From: Octopus bimaculoides
Taxonomy: Eukaryota
NCBI RefSeq assembly: GCF_001194135.2
Contig: NC_068991.1
Span: 22,422,816 to 22,464,572 of the forward strand
Length of the DNA: 41,757 nt
Direction: 5' to 3'
In this document: positions 1,291 to 38,654 of the stretch, piece after piece
Position numbering within the stretch: position 1 is the first letter of the stretch
How the letters are laid out: the number at the start of each line of letters is the position of its first letter
Program-made: the position numbers and the translations under genes
Notes under the pieces: model-generated
What the model saw: only the letters and a program-made list of their open reading frames with translations
What the model was told of the DNA's origin: nothing
Databases searched by the model: none

Positions 1291-1340
1291 TCAAAATAAG
1301 GTGATTAAAAACAAAATAAGCAACAGGATATCCAGAGGTA

Positions 1341-1428
1341 ACGCAGTACAATCATGTCAAGCAACTCCATTTAATTGAACAATGCAACCATTACATCAAT
1401 TTAAATGCAGAGCAATCCTCAGCTGCAT
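1341..1428 (-). ncRNA. Hammerhead ribozyme motif (type I), degenerate copy with GAAA changed to GACA
   Basis: Minus strand: ATGCAG-CTGAGGA-long stem II-GACA-TGATT-GTA-CTGCGT. Confidence 0.55.
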
Positions 1429-1718
1429 AAATACATAGAATTAAATTAAATTAAAACAGATGGACACATTAGTATAATTTTACCTAAAACCTCCAAGAAG
1501 GTAAGGAGATAGACAAAGAACATGCTGTCTTCACTTCAGCTTAGAAGCTACTAAGGTATCAGGAAGAAAGACTTGTTAGAGATCTAGCTTGTCACTGTTT
1601 TTTGGGGTCAGTTTTAATTTGGAGGTTTTAGGTAAAATTATAGTTTTAATTTGGAGGTTTTAGGTAGAATTATACTAATATGTCCATCTGTTTTAATTTA
1701 ATTTAATTCTATGTATTT

Positions 1719-1806
1719 ATGCAGCTGATGATTGCTCTGCATTTAAATTGATGTAATGGTTGCATTGTTTAATTAAATGGAGTCGCTTGAAACAATCGTA
1801 CTGCAT
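1719..1806 (+). ncRNA. Hammerhead ribozyme motif (type I), canonical core
   Basis: Stem I ATGCAG(1719-24)/CTGCAT(1801-06), core CTGATGA(1725-31), extended stem II hairpin (1732-88), GAAA(1789-92), stem III AC-aatc-GT and cleavage triplet GUA(1798-1800). Confidence 0.72.
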
Positions 1807-1866
1807 TAGCTCTNNNNNNNNNNNNNNNNNNNNNNNNNNNNNNNNNNNNNNNNNNNNNNNNNNNNN

Positions 1867-3904: not shown

Positions 3905-5350
3905 ATTTATTTAACAACCTTCTATATGCCTCGACATATTTCCAAGTTTTTTTGTTTATAATGGTGATATCACTTCTAGTGTCTAATTTCATTTTAACAT
4001 TTATATTTCTGATTTTTACCTTCACGAATTTCCTCATCGTTATATTACCAATTTCTCCCAATGATATACTATTTATTCTTTTTCCTTTTGTTCTGACGTT
4101 TTGTCATCTTCGTTCTACAATGCATCTTTATATGTCCTCTATTTCCACAATGACAGCACTCCGCTTTCTTAAATGGACAATTTTTTCCCCCGATGTATAC
4201 CTCCACATACAAAACATGAGTCTATTTCCTGATTTTTGTTGTGTTTTTTAAAAAACACTTTATCTCTATTCTGACTATTTCGCACTTGCTCGTCTTAATT
4301 TGACTATCCTTTCACATTCTTCTGACACTTGCTGTAGGGTTACATCTAGTTTTGTTCTTGCTTTGTGAGAATTTTAGTTCTGTGTCCTTTTTGGCAGTAA
4401 GTCCCTGTGTAAAAATCAGGCATTTGAACATAACTGGCATTAATTCATCCAGCTTAAACTTCTCGCATTCCCTGCTTACTCTACCAGTATATGTGATGTA
4501 GTCCTCGTCATTGTTTTTCTCTATGTTCAGATATTTCTAATGTGTGTTGAACAATGAGCTTTTTTCACAGCAAAATTTTACACAATATATCTATTGTTTC
4601 AATACAGTTTACATCCGAAGGTTTTCTTGAGAGTACATAATTACTGTATCGTTCATGATCTGCAGCTACCAGTTTTCTCAAGATTAAGCACATTTTCATC
4701 TTATTGTCCCAATCTTTACATTCTTTCTCAAAGATTTGCTCATATCTTCTGTAGTATTCTTTGAAGGTAACTCCTTCGCCAGGTTTGTATTTCAACTCTG
4801 TTATGGAATTTGCAACATAGTCTGACGAGAACATTTTTTCTGAATTCCCTGACAACTTCAGTAATTGCAGCATTTGTTGCTGTAATATTATTTGTTGTTG
4901 TTGCTTCTATTGTTGCCCTTGCAGTTGTATCTGCTGTTGTTGTTGCTGTTTTTGCAACTTGAGCAAAGTTTCCAACAAATTTTCCATACTTTTACGATTT
5001 TTCATGAAATTCGTACACCAACTTTATGAGTTCATAAACACCTCTTCAAGTTTCTATTAACTTCATGTGAATTGGTTTATCCTTATCAAATTTATTAATT
5101 CCTCATGAGTTGTTTAAGTCCTCATCACCACTGTTATAATCCTTAAAAATGTTGGATTGTTATAATATCCACTTTGGTATACAGTATACTTAGTAAAATC
5201 AGTAAAGAACAACTATCTCTGACCACCTACTACATACTACGGTACTTCACGTACTTCTCTTTACTTATAGTAACTATGTTATTCCAGTCATCATGTGGGA
5301 GGGGTTACTATTATTACTAATTTCCTACAACAAATAGAATATATGATAAC
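3905..5350 (-). mobile_element. Ty3/gypsy LTR retrotransposon 5' fragment (LTR end, PBS, gag, zinc knuckle, start of protease)
   Basis: Minus-strand translation includes FSSDYVANSITELKYKPGEGVTFKEYYRRYEQIF...LILRKL, RECEKFKLDELMPVMFKCLIFTQGL, CFVCGGIH...CCHCGNRGHIKMHC (CX2CX4HX4C) and VKMKLDTRSDITII (protease D-T-G changed to D-T-R). The LTR end ...ATAACA is at 5132. The far LTR boundary is approximate. Confidence 0.88.
5119..5130 (-). promoter_or_regulatory. Primer-binding site, probably tRNA-Ser(GCU)
   Basis: TGGTGATGAGGA lies one base after the LTR end ATAACA. It equals TGGCGACGAGGA, the complement of the tRNA-Ser(GCU) 3' end, with two CpG-to-TpG changes. Confidence 0.65.
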
Positions 5351-14151: not shown

Positions 14152-14166
14152 TGTATGTATATATAC

Positions 14167-15050
14167 ACTCTATCCACTACAAACACACAGACTCACATTC
14201 ATACCTCAACTTCACCTCCCACCCTAAACACACCAAGTTCTCCATCCCCTATTCCCAATTCCTCTGTTTATGCAGGCTCTGCAGTGACGACCATGACTTT
14301 GCGACTCAGTCTCTATTCATGGCTTGCTACTTCATCCTACGTTGATATCCCCTCACCACTATCCACACCACCCTTGCCAGAGCACGTTCCGTGGACCGTG
14401 CATCTGCTCTCTTCCCCCCTCACCTGCCCCACTGTCACCCATCTCCCGTTTCCCCTCACCTACCATCCCACCACCCTACCTCTCTAACGCAGCATTCTCC
14501 AAGCCTTCTGGCAACTCCAGTCCGACCCCTCCACTTCGCACATCTTCCTAACCGACGCCCCCCTCCTTCAAACGAGCCGACAACCTACGAGACCTCTTGG
14601 TCCACAGCTTCTTCCCTAATCCAACCTCCCAATCCAGCTCATTCCCCTGCTCCCGCCCATGCTACCGCACTTTCCCTTACCTCTCCAACACCACCATCCT
14701 CACAGGCACCGATCATTGTCCCTATCATATCACTGACTCCTTCACCTGCACTTCTAGCAATGTCATTTACTGCATCTCCTGCTCTCTCTGTCCTACTTTA
14801 TACATCGATCAAATGGGATGCCGCTTAGCTGACCAGTTCGCGGAACACCTCCAAGACACGACTCGGCAACAACACCCCAGTCTTGCGCCATTTCCACTCT
14901 ACTGGTCACTCTTTGCAACACCTGTCTGTGTTCAGACTGTCCTTGCACAGGGGCCATCCAGACTCGCATCTTCGCCATGAGCAGGGATTAATCTTCTCTC
15001 TTCACTCCTTTGCACCATGTGTGCTCAACTCTTCTCCCCTCTTCATCTAA
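14167..15050 (+). mobile_element. Penelope-like element (Neptune-type): RT C-terminus plus GIY-YIG endonuclease, degenerate
   Basis: SIHYKHTDSHSYLNFTSHPKHTKFSIPYSQFLCLCRLCSDDHDF...ARARSVDRASAL, then FPCSRPCYRTFPYLS...DSFTCTSSNVIYCISCSLCPTLYIDQMGCRLADQFAEHL. The element's 3' end runs into a pyrimidine tract and an N gap. Confidence 0.92.
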
Positions 15051-15835
15051 CCCTCCTCCTCTTTCCTCTCTTCCTTCCACACCTACTTCTTCCCTCCCAC
15101 CTCTCCTCTCTTGCTCTGGCACCTACTTCCTTTCTTCACTCCTACCCACTTTCTTCCTTCCACCCTCTCCTTTCGTCATCACCCCTCCCTCATTACCCCA
15201 CCCCTACACATTCCAACCCCACCATCCCTATACATCCCAGCCCACCCCAACCCATCCCTTAGACTCCATNNNNNNNNNNNNNNNNNNNNNNNNNNNNNNN
15301 NNNNNNNNNNNNNNNNNNNNNNNNNNNNNNNNNNNNNNNNNNNNNNNNNNNNNNNNNNNNNNNNNNNNNNNNNNNNNNNNNNNNNNNNNNNNNNNNNNNN
15401 NNNNNNNNNNNNNNNNNNNNNNNNNNNNNNNNNNNNNNNNNNNNNNNNNNNNNNNNNNNNNNNNNNNNNNNNNNNNNNNNNNNNNNNNNNNNNNNNNNNN
15501 NNNNNNNNNNNNNNNNNNNNNNNNNNNNNNNNNNNNNNNNNNNNNNNNNNNNNNNNNNNNNNNNNNNNNNNNNNNNNNNNNNNNNNNNNNNNNNNNNNNN
15601 NNNNNNNNNNNNNNNNNNNNNNNNNNNNNNNNNNNNNNNNNNNNNNNNNNNNNNNNNNNNNNNNNNNNNNNNNNNNNNNNNNNNNNNNNNNNNNNNNNNN
15701 NNNNNNNNNNNNNNNNNNNNNNNNNNNNNNNNNNNNNNNNNNNNNNNNNNNNNNNNNNNNNNNNNNNNNNNNNNNNNNNNNNNNNNNNNNNNNNNNNNNN
15801 NNNNNNNNNNNNNNNNNNNNNNNNNNNNNNNNNNN

Positions 15836-17222: not shown

Positions 17223-17479
17223 TATATTTATATAAGGGGCATTACTACAGAATAATGCCACACACTGGACTTCTCAAAATAAACACATTTAGTACCGAAT
17301 GCGAGGAAAAACAACCAACAGAAGATCAACTTTCTTTTAAATAACTCAACTATGTTATTTAAAAGAAAGTTGGTCTTCTTCTGTTGGTCGTTTTTCCTCG
17401 CATTCGGTACTAAATGTGCTTATTTTGGGAAGTCCAGTGTGTGGCATTATTCTGTAGTAATGTCCCTTATATAAATATA
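17223..17479. repeat. Near-perfect long inverted repeat (arms 17223-17345 and 17354-17479, 8-nt centre)
   Basis: The arms are reverse complements of about 123/126 bp with a few substitutions and one 3-nt indel. Both outer ends finish in cccttatataaatata. Confidence 0.95.
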
Positions 17480-28029: not shown

Positions 28030-28590
28030 CACATTCCAAGTTCTGGGGTCTTATAAAATAAGTACCAGTTAAATACTAGGGTCAATGTAATCAACTTGGG
28101 CCCCTTCCTTCGAAATTGCTGGCTTTGAGCCAAAATTTGGAACCATGATTATTATTATTATTATTATTATTAGTTTTAGTTGGTAAGCTAGCAGAATTTT
28201 TAGCATATTGGACAAAATGTTTAGTGATTGTTTACATTTTGAGTTCAAATATTGCCAAGGTCAACTTTGCTTTTCATTGTTACAGAATTGATAATATAAG
28301 TACCAGTCAAGTACTGGGGTCAATGTAATCAACTTACTCTCTCCCCTAACATTACTAGCCTTGTTGCCAAAATTTGAAACTGTTAAACAGTAAGCTGGCA
28401 GAGTCGATACTACATCAGAGAATGTGCTTAGCAGCATTTCTTCCAGCTTTGGGTTCTGTGTTCAAATTCTGCTGTGATTGACTTTGTCTTGCATCCTTTC
28501 ATGGTCTATAAAATAAGTACCAGTCAATCTATTCAACTTGCTATGCCCTCCAAAATTTCAGACCTTGTGCCTATAGCAGAAAAGATTATT
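28030..28590 (+). mobile_element. Cluster of tRNA-derived SINEs (family 2); main copies at 28165-28380 and 28388-28590
   Basis: A-box-like gctggcaga(a/g)t, B-box-like gagttcaaat, and body aggtcaactttgcttttca...aagtaccagt...ggggtcaatgtaatcaactt. Confidence 0.8.
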
Positions 28591-29399: not shown

Positions 29400-29630
29400 T
29401 GCAAATAATAATCCTTTCTACTATAGGCACAAAGCCTGAAATTTAGGTGGAGCGGGATAGTCAGTTATATTGACACCAGTAAGTATTCAGCTAGTATTTA
29501 TTTTATCAACCCCCGCCTAATGGACGAGTGGCAAAGTCAATCTTTGCAGAATTTGAACGCAGAACATAGACAAACAAAACGCTACTATGCATTTTGTCTG
29601 ATGTGCTAACGATTCTGCTAGTATTGATTA
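29400..29630 (-). mobile_element. tRNA-derived SINE (family 2)
   Basis: Reverse complement of the family 2 body (ggcaaagtcaatct..gcagaatttgaac..agaac). Confidence 0.7.
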
Positions 29631-33220: not shown

Positions 33221-33319
33221 TCAGTAAATAGTGGGGTTGCATGAACCGCACATGGAGAAATAGTAGGAAAATGAAGAATAAGGCAGAATGCTAAATTGGA
33301 AGCATATTTTAATAAAGAT

Positions 33320-33357
33320 TTCTAACCGGCTTTCATTGCGAAGCAAATTTTCAAGAA
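33320..33357 (-). ncRNA. Minimal hammerhead motif, U3-A8 core (left-arm copy)
   Basis: Exact reverse complement of 33881-33918. Confidence 0.6.
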
Positions 33358-33880
33358 GGAGACTGAAAATGTTTTCTACAAAGTACAAAATGAAGAAAAT
33401 AATATATAAAATAAATGATATATAAAAAAATAACAATACCAATACATTATATTGTCTTTGAGCTTTTGAAGTTCAATGGTAGTTCATGTATATAATGGTT
33501 GGAAAAATAAGGATGCATGAGAATTGAGAGTTGTGTTAGGTTTAAAAAAAGGGTTAAAAGTTTGTGTTAAGCAGGAAATGTGGTGTCAAAACAGGAAGTG
33601 TGTGTAAGGGGAGACAAATGTTTTTAGTTGCAGTTATGAACTCTTTTTCAACAGGAAGTTTGTCTGTTCCTAGAGAAATTAGGTCACCCCTCAGTAAACC
33701 TAACACAGTAGACCTAACACGACTCTCAATTCTCATGCATCCTTATTTTTCCAACCATTATATACATGAACTACCATTGAACTTCAAAAGCTCAAAGACA
33801 ATATAATGTATTGGTATTGTTGTTTTTTTTATATATTATTTTCTTCATTTTGTACTTTGTAAAAAACATTTTCATTCTCC

Positions 33881-33918
33881 TTCTTGAAAATTTGCTTCGC
33901 AATGAAAGCCGGTTAGAA
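33881..33918 (+). ncRNA. Minimal hammerhead motif, U3-A8 core (right-arm copy)
   Basis: TTC-TTGAAAA-T-TTGC ttc GCAA-T-GAAA-GCCGGT-TA-GAA: stem I TTC/GAA, near-palindromic AGCCGGTT stem III, UA cleavage site. Confidence 0.6.
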
Positions 33919-33970
33919 ATCTTTATTAAAATATGCTTCCAATTTAGCATTCTGCCTTATTCTTCATTTT

Positions 33971-34009
<39 letters not shown>

Positions 34010-34327: not shown

Positions 34328-34529
34328 CTAACCCTTTCGTTACCATGCCAGCTGAAACCAGTTCTTGCTCTGAGTACAATAAAATCTTCCACCAAACCTT
34401 AGTCACAGTTTATGTTCCTAACACTAACTGAATGATAACTAAGTTATTTTACTAAATTCTTTATTATATTTAAAGTAATTGAAAGAAATGCAGAGCATCT
34501 CAAAATAAATACAGTAACAAAAGGGTTAA
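34328..34529. mobile_element. piggyBac-like MITE
   Basis: TIRs CCCTTTCGTTAC / GTAACAAAAGGG flanked by (c)TAA and TTAA. The internal agttattttactaaattc block is shared with the copies at 40.8 kb and (reverse) 35.8 kb. Confidence 0.8.
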
Positions 34530-34624
34530 TGACCTCTTTCGTCCAAAGTTAGGGTGTGCTCAGTGTTACGTGTCCTTTATGGCACAAGCTGAAAGTCGCT
34601 AGTTTCTAGTTCAATATTTAGTAT

Positions 34625-35210: not shown

Positions 35211-36457
35211 AAAGGTTTTCATTTTTCTTATTGCATAATTGTGGGAGAAAAGACAGCACCTATGACTCTATTCAAGGTCTCTGGAACTGGTAAGAGGACG
35301 AAAGGAAGCTATTATTTGGAATTTACCAACAATTATTTGACAAAAATTACAAATAAATAAAATGTTTTTATCAAAAGGCCCTAAAGTAAAAGGATGTAAA
35401 AGAAATTATAATGATACAATAAAAAAGAATCAGAAACATCATTGATGCATTTTAGATTTTCAAATTTGTATACTAAGTTGAAACTAAATGATTAACACCT
35501 AAAACAACCTTTTAAAAAAAATGACTTATTAAAAATAAAACCAACTCTAATTGTGTTTATATATAATCCTTTGCCTGTACAAATCATTTTCATAAGTTTG
35601 TCCTAAACATCCATGCTTGTTTTGAGATCTTTTCATTGGCCTTTCCTTTCTTAAGTCCTAAGTTACTCTGGTGGTTGAAAAAATTGGGAATGTGCATCAT
35701 ACATATATGCTGCATGGACATCAAGGAAATTGTGTCCTGTGTGTATCATGATATACATGACGACAGGCAAAGGGTTAACACATTTGAGGCCATGTTTCTG
35801 TTAAAATTTACTGTTTTTGCTTAAATTAATTTTGAAAATAAGGAAGAATTTAGTAAAATATGTTTTTCTGCTGATGTTTGGCACATAAATTAGCATGAAA
35901 GTTTGATGAAAGCTTTTAGATTAGATCGGAGGCAGTTTCAGACAGGTTGGCATTAAAAAGATTAAAGTATTGTTTGAATATAAATTTAAAGTGAATATAA
36001 CATGAAGAATTACATTAAATGAAATAAAAATTATATTACCAAACAACCAAAAAGTTTATCCCTTTGAAATTTAGTCAAGAAACATTGCATCTATAGAACA
36101 GGGTTAAGTTGGAAATCTATACCCTAAATTTACCAGTGTCTCATTCTTCAAAACAGAATTGCTTCTACTAGAACCTTCTTCATAAACACCCTTAAATCTG
36201 ACTTGATTATTTTCAGTGTGATATCTATGAAATTGAAAATTTTAGCAGATTATTACAATTAACCCTTTTGTTACCATATTTCTGTTAAAATACAATGCAT
36301 TTTTTTTTTTCGTTTTTGGATTTGGTTTGCAAGATTTTTTTATGTGATTTCGTGTGTTGAAGCATATTCTGTTGTGTCTGGGGAGAGTCATTTTCTTATC
36401 GTGCCTTAAAATTTAACACACTCACTGTTAAAATTTCCACTTATTATTTTTATTTTC

Positions 36458-36494
36458 CTAAAATTTTCGTTGCGTCTTGCAACCTTTTCAATAG
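36458..36494 (-). ncRNA. Minimal hammerhead motif, U3-A8 core (left-arm copy)
   Basis: Exact reverse complement of 36506-36542. Confidence 0.65.
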
Positions 36495-36505
36495 TTTTGA
36501 CTAGA

Positions 36506-36542
36506 CTATTGAAAAGGTTGCAAGACGCAACGAAAATTTTAG
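36506..36542 (+). ncRNA. Minimal hammerhead motif, U3-A8 core (right-arm copy)
   Basis: CTA-TTGAAAA-G-GTTGC aagac GCAAC-GAAA-ATT-T-TAG: stem I CTA/TAG, perfect 5-bp stem II, palindromic AAAATTTT stem III, UU cleavage site. Confidence 0.65.
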
Positions 36543-36704
36543 GAAAATAAAAATAAGTGGAAATTTTAACAGTGAGTGTGTTAAATTTTAAGGCACGATA
36601 AAAAAATGACTCTCCCCAGACACAACAGAATACACTGCATTTGTTTCAGTTGATTTTGAAAATAATGAATTTAATAAAATAAGTTTATCATTATTAATCT
36701 GGTG

Positions 36705-36890
36705 TAAGGTAGAGCTGGCTGGATCATTATCATTTTGTCCATCTTTACGTTCTGAGTTCAAATTCTGCCAAGGTCAACTTTGCTTTTCACCCTTTTGGAG
36801 TTGATAAAATAAGTACCAGTTGAGCGTTGGGCTTGATGTAATTGACTTGCCCCTTCCTCAAGAATTACTGGCTTTGTGTCAAAATTTTAG
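36705..36890 (+). mobile_element. tRNA-derived SINE (family 2)
   Basis: tttacgttctgagttcaaattctgccaaggtcaactttgcttttcacccttttggagttgataaaataagtaccagtt. Confidence 0.85.
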
Positions 36891-38654
36891 ATCATTATTA
36901 ATCTGGTGTTAATCAAAATCTCTATAAAACAGGGAACTTGCATCATAGAGCCAAAGGCAGTTTCTGGCAATTTGGTATCAAAAGGATTAACCAGTAAGTG
37001 CATTTTTATGAACTCCGCTTCAGTCAATTCCTCCTGGCTCCATGACTTCAACACTATAGCCCTGGATGGCAGGCGCTCCATCCATGACCATCTTGTCTTT
37101 TTCTGAGGTAAAGTGTGCCCAGGACCACATTGTCCAATGTGTTCATCTCTAAGATAGTAGGGTATGATTTGAGTGAGATTTGGAAGCTAATTCTAACGTA
37201 CCACATGACTATGTAGAGTCTCCCTAATTTTATTTAGGTAAACAATTTATGTGTTGATCCTAATATAGTTATATCATGAGTACAATTTATGTATTTTTTC
37301 TAGATCTGATGATCCTTATATATTCTGTTTTTACAGATTATTTATAATTATGAGTTTTAAGTTAGTCATGATATAATAGTTAAATCACAGCTTAGCATTA
37401 CATTGTGACTTGTGTGTTCTAGGTGTGCTGTTTACTTACGTAGTTTAGTTAGGGATTAATAATTAATAGATTCTGATAAGTGTTCCCAGATGTGATGATA
37501 TATTTAAGTCAGGGATTAGTATTATATTACAACGTATGTTTCAAGATATGTAACTATTGATATAGTTGTCATGTTGGAACATTATAGATTAATAGTTAAT
37601 TAGAACTAATCACATCTTGAACATGAATTTCATTAATTACTAATCTTTATGGTTTCCAGGTGATTTAATTATAATATCAATACTATAACATTTTAAACAT
37701 TTATAAATAATGGCTTACACATGATGCCAAGCAATGCCAAGCTGAGCTCATGTTACAGTTTAGCTTTCTATTCATTAACTTTTTTTCCCCCCTTATGGCT
37801 TCATCAGTGACGGAAGGGATACACCCATGACCTTTTCAAGACCTCCAAGACTAGTGGGTGAGGGAAAAGAAGAAACAATGAATCTGACTAAATGTGTGCA
37901 TGTGTGTGTGTTTAAACATGTTTTGCAGCCAGTGCACAAAAGTTGTGTGAAAAAATAATGCAGTAATTAATAATTATGCTTAAAATTAATTAAATGTTTT
38001 TGAAACAGTTTATAGGAATTCAATGTTTTTTTCATGAAGTTCTTAAAGCCTAGTAGTAGTGGTTTTGATAAGTTTATCTTGTTAAAATTCCTAAAAATAT
38101 TTTTAACATACTTTCTTTAGAATAATTTTTACACAAGATTAAAGGTTTTGTTGGTAGGATTTTCATAAGGCCCTCATTAAGATATTCTATTACAGTTTTA
38201 TTAGCCATGATGGATAGGCTGTGCCAAAATTTTCTGTATACAATATCAAATTTACATTTGAGCACAACATAAAAGTTTTTCCATAAATTTACTACTAGAA
38301 ATTAGAAGGGTCATTACTTATGGGTTACTAAACATTACTTTCAGCTTTATAATATTCCTGCTGGAAGCCATTGTTGATGGATGGGCCTGCCAGCTAATAA
38401 AGCAGCTCCCCAGATATATCACAGAGAATTAGAACATGAATTTCATTAACTACTGAATTGGATCATAGGTATGTTGTATGAGGGACAGAATTCATTTCTC
38501 AAACTCGATTGTAGTATCATATGAATTTGCTTTAATGCAACAGGAAGATTATGACCATTATAACATCTCATTTATTCCTCACTCTAAAATACATTGGTTT
38601 CATGTCAGTAAAACTGCATCCAAATCAGGCCGAAAGAGGAGAAGGGCAGTTGAT

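What the first reader, a model, noticed from the sequence alone, without database searches (positions are those of the whole stretch)
36289..36642. Complete fold-back retro-insertion with TSD, A-tail and paired U3-A8 hammerheads, nested in a piggyBac MITE
Seen: a 14-nt target duplication AATACA[A/C]TGCATTT flanks the insert. The minus-strand copy runs to an A-run at about 36300, and a truncated plus-strand copy is joined head-to-head with a 9-nt centre. Each arm starts with CTA-TTGAAAA-G-GTTGC aagac GCAAC-GAAA-ATT-T-TAG, which has a perfect stem II, a palindromic AAAATTTT stem III for dimer formation and a 3-bp stem I. The inversion junction sits 1 nt and 10 nt upstream of the two ribozyme motifs. 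Inference: target-primed insertion of a short ribozyme-bearing RNA with 5' inversion. This is an independent family from 33.3-34.0 kb yet uses the same U3-A8 core.
Basis: partly seen in the sequence, partly recalled or inferred. Interest (0 to 1): 0.82.

Follow-up and report, generated by a model that had tools for sequence, protein, structure and literature searches.

The report
Penelope-type hammerhead fold-back retro-insertion
A real, cleanly bounded 326-bp hairpin-shaped retro-insertion in an octopus-like genome carries two copies of a minimal hammerhead-ribozyme motif; it matches what is already known for Penelope-like retroelements, so it is a good example of a known kind and not a new one.

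Summary
A 326-bp insert (36303-36628) sits in a TTAA-bounded MITE. It is flanked by a 13/14-identical 14-bp duplication, and uninterrupted MITE copies in the same window carry that 14-mer only once. The insert is two head-to-head copies of one sequence (1 mismatch and one 3-nt indel over about 128 nt, with a 9-nt centre). Each copy starts with CUA-UUGAAAA-G-GUUGC/GCAAC-GAAA-AU-U-U-UAG.

The interpretation needs re-filing. The motif has the published grammar of the minimal hammerheads of Penelope-like elements (PLEs): one unpaired nucleotide after A9, a G10.1-C11.1 pair, palindromic 15.2-16.2, a short helix I, and the U3-A8 covariation already reported in Schistosoma. A descriptor built on that grammar recovers the Anolis PLE hammerhead as a control, hits only these two arms in the window, and gave 0 hits in 1500 shuffles.

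Three further features are PLE signatures: the head-to-head arrangement, a 62-66-nt extension at one end only, and an AC-rich motif 81-88 nt after the predicted cut. It is not an L1-style 5' inversion, because both arms carry the same sequence.

Not shown: catalysis, conservation across copies (no other copy was reachable) and a linked PLE ORF.

Verdict: new member of a known kind, moderate interest.

The parts
36259..36990 (.). Host element: piggyBac-type (TTAA-bounded) MITE, interrupted by this insertion and by a second nested insertion.
   Evidence: TTAA at both ends, terminal repeats matching 11/13. Other copies in the window at 35775-35965, 34440-34545 and about 40.9 kb.
36289..36302 (+). 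Left copy of the target-site duplication, AATACAATGCATTT.
   Evidence: Present once in uninterrupted MITE copies. The last 3 T overlap the T-run of the insert.
36303..36364 (-). One-sided 3' extension ('tail') of the minus-strand copy, ending in an 8-11 nt A-run. It is absent from the other arm.
   Evidence: Gapped alignment of the two arms. Compare the optional one-sided tail of PLE insertions.
36365..36495 (-). Left arm: the minus-strand copy of the unit, with its 5' end at the centre.
36458..36494 (-). Minimal hammerhead-like motif, minus-strand copy: CUA-UUGAAAA-G-GUUGC(AAGAC)GCAAC-GAAA-AU-U-U-UAG.
   Evidence: Exact match. Descriptor hits.
36496..36504 (.). 9-nt centre, TTTGACTAG, between the arms. 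This is the head-to-head junction and can be assigned to either copy.
36506..36542 (+). Minimal hammerhead-like motif, plus-strand copy. Predicted cleavage is after U17 at 36539.
   Evidence: A local 56-nt fold gives stem I plus stem II as the minimum-free-energy structure.
36505..36632 (+). Right arm: the plus-strand copy, with no tail. It joins the target through a 4-nt AATA microhomology.
36620..36627 (+). AC-rich ACACAACA, 81-88 nt after the predicted cut and 1-5 nt before the arm end. Candidate internal start site for reverse transcription.
   Evidence: Spacing computed. The Anolis PLE starts RT in ACAACACA, 82-89 nt after its cut.
36629..36642 (+). Right copy of the target-site duplication, AATACACTGCATTT.

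Best explanation
This is a Penelope-like-element (PLE) type retro-insertion. The inserted RNA was the hammerhead-bearing 3'-terminal (pseudo-LTR-type) part of a PLE, or a short non-autonomous derivative of one. It was copied into a staggered break in an older TTAA MITE of an octopus-like genome.

Shown:
- The break left a 10-14 bp duplication.
- The + strand 3'-OH at ...GCATT(T) is continuous with the complement of the unit's A-rich 3' end.
- The opposite 3'-OH (...TGTATT) is continuous with the complement of the same unit starting 62-66 nt further in, next to an AC-rich ACACAACA motif, through a 4-nt AAUA/TATT overlap.
- Both copies run to the same point just upstream of the hammerhead motif and are joined head to head.

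Inferred:
- Both target 3' ends primed reverse transcription on two RNA molecules, one from the outer and one from the inner start site. This is what the purified Anolis PLE protein does in vitro.
- Alternatively, about equally likely, one cDNA snapped back on itself at the RNA 5' end, copied itself, and was joined to the target by microhomology.

The motif is a PLE-type minimal hammerhead with the U3-A8 covariation. It has no usable helix III as a monomer, so if it is active at all it would cut after U17 only when two copies pair through the AAUU/AAAAUUUU palindrome. In its present genomic form, a transcript through both arms would fold into a ~130-bp hairpin instead.
For: - Real insertion: a single 14-mer in empty-site MITE copies. 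The arms are nearly identical and the TSD copies differ at 1 of 14 positions, so the fold-back most likely dates from the insertion.
- Descriptor test: the strict descriptor finds the Anolis PAc hammerhead with the same parameters (1 bulged nt, 2-nt helix III, 3-bp stem I). It finds only the two arms in 41.7 kb on both strands, with 0 hits in 1500 dinucleotide shuffles. The looser descriptor expects 0.027 hits per window.
- Opposite-strand pairs: 'dual min-HHRs ... 100-700 bp apart but in opposite strands' are reported for truncated PLEs.
- Insertion architecture: an inverted copy adjacent at the 5' end and a tail at one end only are stated hallmarks of PLE insertions.
- Anolis PLE biochemistry: PAc cleaves and extends both target strands, prefers ATT, and starts RT internally in an AC-rich site 111-118 nt into the ORF. 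That is 82-89 nt after its hammerhead cut.
- Match here: ACACAACA lies 81-88 nt after the cut, and both TSD ends can be read as cuts after ATT.
- PLEs in this genome: the window ORF at 14597-14980 has 1012 homologues. The full-length ones carry RVT_1 plus a C-terminal GIY-YIG domain.
- Second example in the window: the fold-back at 33225-33974 shows the same head-to-head layout, a one-sided 44-nt tail and (TA)n flanks.
- No SINE head: no tRNA, 5S or 7SL signal.
Against: - No other copy of this family could be retrieved: none in the window, two metagenome scans or 40 kb of Octopus sinensis. Conservation, covariation, true unit ends and linkage to a PLE ORF are therefore untested.
- Rfam gives no hammerhead match, even at E<=10.
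- Stem II (5 bp) and stem I (3 bp) are at the short end of the published range.
- The extension (62-66 nt) is longer than the published 30-40 bp tail.
- It ends in an A-run next to a T-rich nick, which also fits LINE-type priming on a poly(A) tail.
- ATT and AC-rich motifs are not rare in a 33% GC genome, and the comparison with PAc rests on one lizard element.
- The descriptor was written after seeing the motif.
- The whole 205-nt unit is no more structured than shuffles (z = 0.30).
- Published PLE min-HHRs cleave poorly even as dimers.
Confidence: 0.62

Rival explanations
1. A short SINE-like, LINE-mobilised retroposon. A ~200-nt polyadenylated RNA was inserted by ordinary target-primed reverse transcription at a T-rich nick. 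The second arm arose by snap-back (hairpin-primed) second-strand synthesis. The hammerhead-like motif is a passenger or relic, and no PLE machinery is involved.
For: - An 8-11 nt A-run lies exactly at the 3' junction, next to ...GCATTT.
- A 14-bp TSD is in the normal range for LINE-type insertions (own knowledge).
- The same MITE carries another insertion with a 19-bp perfect TSD (36687-36705 / 36891-36909), so long-TSD retro-insertion is active in this genome.
- Snap-back automatically explains why both arms start at the same nucleotide.
Against: - There is no tRNA, 5S or 7SL head.
- The A-run is short and embedded in A-rich sequence (AAAAACGAAAAAAAA).
- The motif matches the PLE grammar in features not needed for a chance or relic motif.
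- The inner arm end lies at an AC-rich site with PLE-like spacing.
- The one-sided extension and head-to-head layout recur in the unrelated fold-back at 33.2-34.0 kb, which has no A-run at all.
Confidence: 0.2
2. The fold-back insertion is real, but the 'hammerhead' is a chance resemblance in AT-rich DNA: a GC-rich 5-bp hairpin flanked by TTGAAAA and GAAAATTTT, with no ribozyme ancestry or activity.
For: - Rfam finds no hammerhead.
- The core-only pattern [CT]TGAN[GA]A...GAAA occurs 21 times in the window.
- Stem I has only 3 bp.
- A13 and A14 can be drawn into the AAAAUUUU duplex.
- The two arms are one event, so there is a single independent observation.
Against: - The strict descriptor gave 0 hits in 1500 shuffled windows, and the loose one expects 0.027 per window.
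- Features outside the catalytic boxes agree with the published family (bulge after A9, G10.1-C11.1, palindromic 15.2-16.2).
- The context is an insertion with PLE-type architecture, in a genome that has PLEs.
Confidence: 0.12
3. Not a retro-insertion: either a DNA transposon or MITE with long terminal inverted repeats, or an assembly or library palindrome artefact.
For: - Long, nearly perfect inverted repeats with a short loop are typical of fold-back MITEs and of some sequencing artefacts.
- The window has other fold-backs (17223-17479, 1334-1813) and assembly gaps.
Against: - The arms are asymmetric: 62-66 nt are present at one end only.
- A 10-14 bp TSD is unlike cut-and-paste families (own knowledge).
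- The TSD and the arms have accumulated differences (1/14; 1 mismatch plus a 3-nt indel), which an artefact would not show.
- The flanks are colinear with empty-site MITE copies.
- There is no gap within 36-37 kb.
Confidence: 0.04

Closest known systems
Minimal hammerhead ribozymes of Penelope-like elements (min-HHR; Cervera & de la Pena 2014, PMC4209133), including the U3-A8 variant of Schistosoma Cercyon elements
   Same: - Type I layout with no real helix III.
- One unpaired nucleotide between A9 and 10.1.
- G10.1-C11.1 pair and palindromic 15.2-16.2.
- Short helix I.
- U3-A8 in place of C3-G8.
- Occurs as single motifs or opposite-strand pairs 100-700 bp apart in truncated copies.
   Different: - Helix II is 5 bp, against 6-8 bp in the described families.
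- Helix I is 3 bp, against 4-5 bp in most families (3 in Anolis PAc by my parse, 2 in D. virilis).
- The two motifs here are only 14 nt apart.
- The host is a cephalopod, for which the held literature reports no hammerheads.
- No linked PLE ORF was found.
Poseidon PLE of Anolis carolinensis (PAc), biochemically characterised (PMC11167929)
   Same: - Same motif grammar, and recognised by the same descriptor.
- An AC-rich octamer about 82-89 nt after the hammerhead cut, where RT starts.
- Two alternative 3' ends that define a 'tail'.
- Both target strands are cleaved, preferentially at ATT, and both are extended.
   Different: - No sequence homology outside the motif.
- PAc has C3-G8.
- The tail here is 62-66 nt, not 30-40 nt, and ends in an A-run.
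- PAc hammerhead cleavage was not needed for insertion in vitro.
Complex tandem or inverted PLE insertions (Craig et al. 2021, PMC8557442)
   Same: - Strong 5' truncation.
- An inverted copy abutting the 5' end, which forms inverted repeats.
- An extension at one end only.
- (TA)n target bias, seen for the second fold-back at 33.2-34.0 kb.
   Different: Here both copies end at the same 5' nucleotide (within 9 nt), and the whole insert is only 326 bp with no ORF.
Metazoan non-LTR retrozymes and Schistosoma Sm-alpha SINE-like elements
   Same: Short, non-coding, hammerhead-bearing retroelements, thought to be non-autonomous relatives of PLE pseudo-LTRs.
   Different: - Retrozymes are defined by head-to-tail tandem units with canonical type I hammerheads and circular RNAs. 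No tandem is present here.
- Sm-alpha has a pol III promoter and a canonical hammerhead. No such head is found here.
L1 twin-priming 5' inversions
   Same: Both target 3' ends can be used as primers, and microhomology at an internal RNA site fits the right junction.
   Different: Twin priming gives two different, adjacent segments of the element in opposite orientation (own knowledge). Here the same ~128 nt is present twice.

Membership tests
PLE minimal hammerhead (min-HHR) | Catalytic boxes CUGANGA ... GAAA, with C3-G8 or the covarying U3-A8 | tested here: met
   UUGAAAA ... GAAA, that is U3-A8. The variant is published.
PLE minimal hammerhead (min-HHR) | One unpaired nucleotide between A9 and 10.1 | tested here: met
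   G at 36516 (+) and 36484 (-). The descriptor requires it, and the feature is listed.
PLE minimal hammerhead (min-HHR) | G10.1-C11.1 closing pair and an extended helix II | tested here: met
   GUUGC/GCAAC with G10.1-C11.1. Its 5 bp is shorter than the 6-8 bp of the described families.
PLE minimal hammerhead (min-HHR) | No stable helix III; positions 15.2-16.2 palindromic, allowing a dimer | tested here: met
   A15.1-A-U-U16.1 (AAUU), within AAAAUUUU.
PLE minimal hammerhead (min-HHR) | Short helix I and H17 not G | tested here: met
   CUA/UAG, 3 bp, and U17. The PAc control also gives 3 bp.
PLE minimal hammerhead (min-HHR) | Consensus family in the genome with covariation and compensatory changes | not testable with these tools
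   Only the two near-identical arms are available. No other copy was found.
PLE minimal hammerhead (min-HHR) | Located in the pseudo-LTR of an element encoding RT plus GIY-YIG | not testable with these tools
   A PLE endonuclease remnant exists in the window at 14.2-15.3 kb, but it is 21 kb away and its 3' part runs into a gap.
PLE minimal hammerhead (min-HHR) | Site-specific self-cleavage as a dimer | not testable with these tools
   Needs in vitro transcription. The local fold is hammerhead-compatible.
Rfam hammerhead families | Match to a curated hammerhead covariance model | tested here: not met
   No hammerhead family at gathering score or at E<=10. Only generic hairpin matches to miRNA precursor models appeared.
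PLE insertion architecture | Inverted copy abutting the 5' end of a 5'-truncated copy | tested here: met
   Head-to-head arms with a 9-nt centre. Definition.
PLE insertion architecture | Optional 30-40 bp tail at one end only, lying between two RT start sites | tested here: inconclusive
   A one-sided extension is present but is 62-66 nt long and ends in an A-run. The second fold-back has a 44-nt one-sided tail.
PLE insertion architecture | Internal RT start in an AC-rich site downstream of the hammerhead; cuts at ATT on both strands (known for PAc only) | tested here: inconclusive
   ACACAACA lies 81-88 nt after the cut, against 82-89 nt in PAc. Both junctions are compatible with ATT, but microhomology blurs the exact nicks. 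This is a single comparison.
L1-type twin-priming inversion | Inverted and direct segments are different, adjacent parts of the element | tested here: not met
   Both arms carry the same sequence.
Non-LTR retrozyme | At least two head-to-tail tandem units, each with a type I hammerhead | tested here: not met
   No direct tandem copy in the region or the window.
SINE | tRNA-, 5S- or 7SL-derived pol III head | tested here: not met
   ARAGORN finds none. No such Rfam match at E<=10.
piggyBac-type MITE (host) | TTAA target duplication and short terminal inverted repeats starting with CCC | tested here: met
   TTAA at 36259 and 36987; CCCTTTTGTTACC against TCCTTTTGATACC. Several copies in the window. 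A link to a piggyBac transposase was not tested.

The most novel reading that the evidence does not exclude
The unit is a distinct, ultra-short (~200 nt) non-autonomous parasite of PLEs whose RNA begins at the hammerhead. Under this reading the palindromic helix III acts mainly as an RNA dimerisation signal, not as part of a working ribozyme. Two RNAs held together at their 5' hammerheads would be reverse-transcribed from the two ends of one double-strand break. This would directly produce the head-to-head inverted structure, and would explain why PLE insertions so often carry an inverted copy.
Probability: 0.1. Interest if true: 0.7.

Novelty: new member of a known kind. Interest (0 to 1): 0.33.

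Why it matters
The locus shows every junction of a PLE-type event at nucleotide resolution: a verifiable empty site, both target junctions with their microhomologies, two different 3' ends in one insertion, and the 5'-5' joint beside the ribozyme motif.

It extends the U3-A8 minimal hammerhead to a cephalopod; the published case is from a flatworm. It also offers a compact substrate for two questions:
- whether PLE reverse transcriptases prime from both strands in vivo, as the Anolis enzyme does in vitro;
- whether hammerhead dimerisation plays any part in that.

It does not reveal a new kind of element or ribozyme.

Tried and rejected
- **Rfam.** The whole window at gathering score, and the region and a single arm at E<=10, gave no hammerhead. 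The only hits were generic long-hairpin matches to miRNA precursor models, which I do not read as miRNA genes.
- **More copies of the family.** All searches failed: blastn of the window against itself, two metagenome scans with 20-mers (one search found none; one search gave one GC-rich bacterial chance hit), two 20-kb Octopus sinensis loci, and exact look-ups of window ORFs that span the junctions.
- **Octopus PLE with its 3' end.** The word-indexed protein search with the endonuclease remnant found nothing. The exhaustive search worked, but the closest relative sits on a 1-kb Logan contig with no informative 3' region.
- **Is the 62-nt tail a degenerate second hammerhead, or complementary to stem II?** Local alignments are no better than shuffles, so this was rejected.
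- **Structure of the 205-nt unit.** It is not unusually structured (z = 0.30).
- **Homology to Anolis PAc.** There is no global sequence homology; only the motif grammar and spacing agree.
- **tRNA-like head.** None found.

Full report
**Setting.** The window is AT-rich (32-41% GC per 2-kb window, mostly 32-36%) eukaryotic DNA with microsatellites and assembly gaps. A gag-like DUF7083 ORF at 4565-4873 is 69-70% identical to two Octopus sinensis proteins. Stretches of the window are 84-87% identical to an O. sinensis locus. The source is therefore an octopus or a close cephalopod relative.

**Observation.**
- The insert spans 36303-36628.
- It is flanked by AATACAATGCATTT (36289-36302) and AATACACTGCATTT (36629-36642).
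Two uninterrupted copies of the host MITE in the same window (35775-35965 on +, 34440-34545 on -) read straight through the site and contain the 14-mer once. The duplication was therefore created by the insertion.
- The host is bounded by TTAA (36259 and 36987-36990), with terminal repeats CCCTTTTGTTACC and TCCTTTTGATACC. This fits a piggyBac-type MITE.
- The insert consists of two inverted copies of one sequence. A gapped alignment shows 1 mismatch and one 3-nt indel over about 128 nt, with a 9-nt centre, TTTGACTAG.
- The minus-strand copy runs 62-66 nt further at its outer (3') end and finishes in 8-11 A.
- The plus-strand copy stops at ...CAACAGAATA and shares AATA with the target. The shorter arm is therefore short at its 3' end, not its 5' end.

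**The motif.** Each arm begins with CUA-UUGAAAA-G-GUUGC(AAGAC)GCAAC-GAAA-AU-U-U-UAG. It is exact on both strands, with none expected by chance.
- Rfam gives no hammerhead match at any threshold tried.
- The features that look irregular for a textbook hammerhead are the ones published for the minimal hammerheads of Penelope-like elements (PLEs). [quoted passage not shown] A U3-A8 covariation of the core was found in Schistosoma Cercyon elements with about 1300 hits.
- A loose descriptor finds only the two arms in the window and expects 0.027 hits per shuffled window.
- A strict descriptor encoding the published grammar recovers the hammerhead of the Anolis Poseidon element PAc from the RNA sequence printed in PMC11167929. 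It does so with the same parameters (one bulged nucleotide, 2-nt helix III, 3-bp stem I). It again finds only the two arms, with no hit in 1500 dinucleotide shuffles.
- The descriptor was written after seeing the motif, and the two arms are one event. The evidence is therefore strong against chance but is not proof of function.
- A 56-nt local fold gives stem I plus stem II as the minimum-free-energy structure. The whole 205-nt unit is no more structured than shuffles.

**Architecture.** The literature describes PLE insertions as follows:
- They are strongly 5'-truncated and often have an inverted copy abutting the 5' end.
- They carry an optional extension ('tail') at one end only.
- Min-HHRs occur as opposite-strand pairs 100-700 bp apart.
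- The purified Anolis PLE protein cleaves and extends both target strands, prefers ATT, and starts reverse transcription at two internal sites. The tail is the sequence between those sites, and the main site is an AC-rich element 111-118 nt into the ORF. That site reads ACAACACA and lies 82-89 nt after the hammerhead cut as I parse it.

In the present insert:
- ACACAACA (36620-36627) lies 81-88 nt after the predicted cut at 36539 and 1-5 nt before the end of the tail-less arm.
- Both target junctions can be read as nicks after ATT (GCATT^T on the top strand, TGTATT^ on the bottom). Microhomology blurs the exact positions.
- These agreements rest on a single lizard element and on motifs that are not rare in AT-rich DNA. 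I count them as supportive only.

**PLEs in this genome.** The ORF at 14597-14980 has no Pfam hit of its own but has 1012 homologues in an exhaustive search. The full-length ones (816-891 aa) carry RVT_1 followed by a C-terminal GIY-YIG domain. A 78%-identical copy exists on an octopus Logan contig. This remnant is 21 kb from the finding and cannot be linked to it.

**The second fold-back (33225-33974).**
- It has no sequence similarity to the first.
- It has the same layout: two copies head to head with their 3' ends outward, a 44-nt extension at one end only, and (TA)n on both sides. One search lists (TA)n as a preferred PLE target.
- Its UUGAAAA-...-GAAA-GCCGGU motif has a good palindrome for a dimeric helix III. 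It lacks G10.1-C11.1, has a 4-bp stem II and fails both descriptors.
- The claim of the same U3-A8 core in an independent family is therefore only weakly supported. The claim that both are PLE-type insertions is reasonably supported.

**Mechanism.**
- *Shown by the sequence:* a staggered break of 10-14 bp; the top-strand 3' end continuous with the complement of the A-rich end of the unit; the bottom-strand 3' end continuous with the complement of the unit from an internal point, with a 4-nt overlap; both copies ending within 9 nt of each other just upstream of the motif.
- *Inferred, model A:* reverse transcription was primed from both 3' ends on two RNA molecules, and the two cDNA ends were then joined.
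- *Inferred, model B:* a single cDNA folded back at the RNA 5' end (a 3-nt ACT/AGT overlap is available), copied itself, and was captured by microhomology.
- I cannot separate these two models with one locus.
- The arms contain the whole ribozyme. The RNA 5' end was therefore not produced by this ribozyme's own cleavage, which would leave the core on the upstream fragment.
- An L1-style twin-priming inversion is excluded as such, because the two arms are the same sequence and not adjacent segments.

**What is not shown.** Catalytic activity, conservation among copies, the true ends of the family, and the identity of the mobilising enzyme all remain open. A LINE-mobilised, polyadenylated short retroposon with snap-back remains a serious rival (about 0.2), mainly because of the terminal A-run.

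**Verdict.** The feature is best filed as a new (cephalopod) member of the known class of PLE-associated minimal hammerhead insertions. Its value is as an unusually clean locus, not as a novelty.

Noticed in passing
window 36687-36909: A second nested insertion in the same MITE. A ~185-bp segment (36706-36890) is flanked by a perfect 19-bp direct repeat, ATCATTATTAATCTGGTGT. It is related (70-77% identity) to repeats at 28053-28524 and 29428-29568. The sequence has B-box-like GAGTTCAAATTCTGCC, so it may be a tRNA-derived SINE, but ARAGORN and Rfam report nothing.
   Followed up: partly
window 33225-33974: A fold-back of an unrelated sequence. The arms (33264-33544 and 33709-33974) are about 93% identical by BLAST, or 98% outside a 15-nt indel. 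The centre is 164 nt. A one-sided 44-nt extension lies at the left end (about 33225-33263), and (TA)n flanks both sides. It carries a UUGAAAA...GAAA-GCCGGU motif at 33884 (+) and 33354 (-). The architecture is PLE-like, but the motif fails the hammerhead descriptor.
   Followed up: partly
window 14165-15270: Degenerate 3' part of a Penelope-like element. It has a GIY-YIG endonuclease remnant and a decayed CxxxC..C linker. It starts at a (TATG)n/(TA)n microsatellite and runs into an N gap. The strand is strikingly pyrimidine-rich (GC skew -0.475), and a 78%-identical copy on a Logan contig (SRR11869394) differs mostly by transitions. The cause of the skew is unexplained.
   Followed up: partly
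window 17223-17479: A 103-nt-arm fold-back (96% complementary, 51-nt centre) flanked by TA-rich sequence on both sides. It could be a TA-target MITE or another inverted retro-insertion. No hammerhead-like core is present.
   Followed up: no
window 1334-1813: A 163-nt-arm fold-back (93% complementary, 154-nt centre) with a short internal direct duplication (GTTTTAATTTGGAGGTTTTAGGTA). It abuts an assembly gap at 1815, so an assembly effect is possible.
   Followed up: no
window 4565-4873: A DUF7083 (retrotransposon gag-like) ORF, 69-70% identical to two Octopus sinensis proteins. The surrounding 4572-5204 is 84-85% identical to O. sinensis chromosome CM016862.1. This identifies the source as an octopus-like cephalopod.
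   Followed up: yes
window 36444-36556: The innermost 52 nt of each arm, which hold the hammerhead motif, are 100% complementary. All arm differences (1 mismatch, one 3-nt indel) lie further out. With so few differences this may be chance, but it could also reflect hairpin-proximal correction or selection.
   Followed up: no
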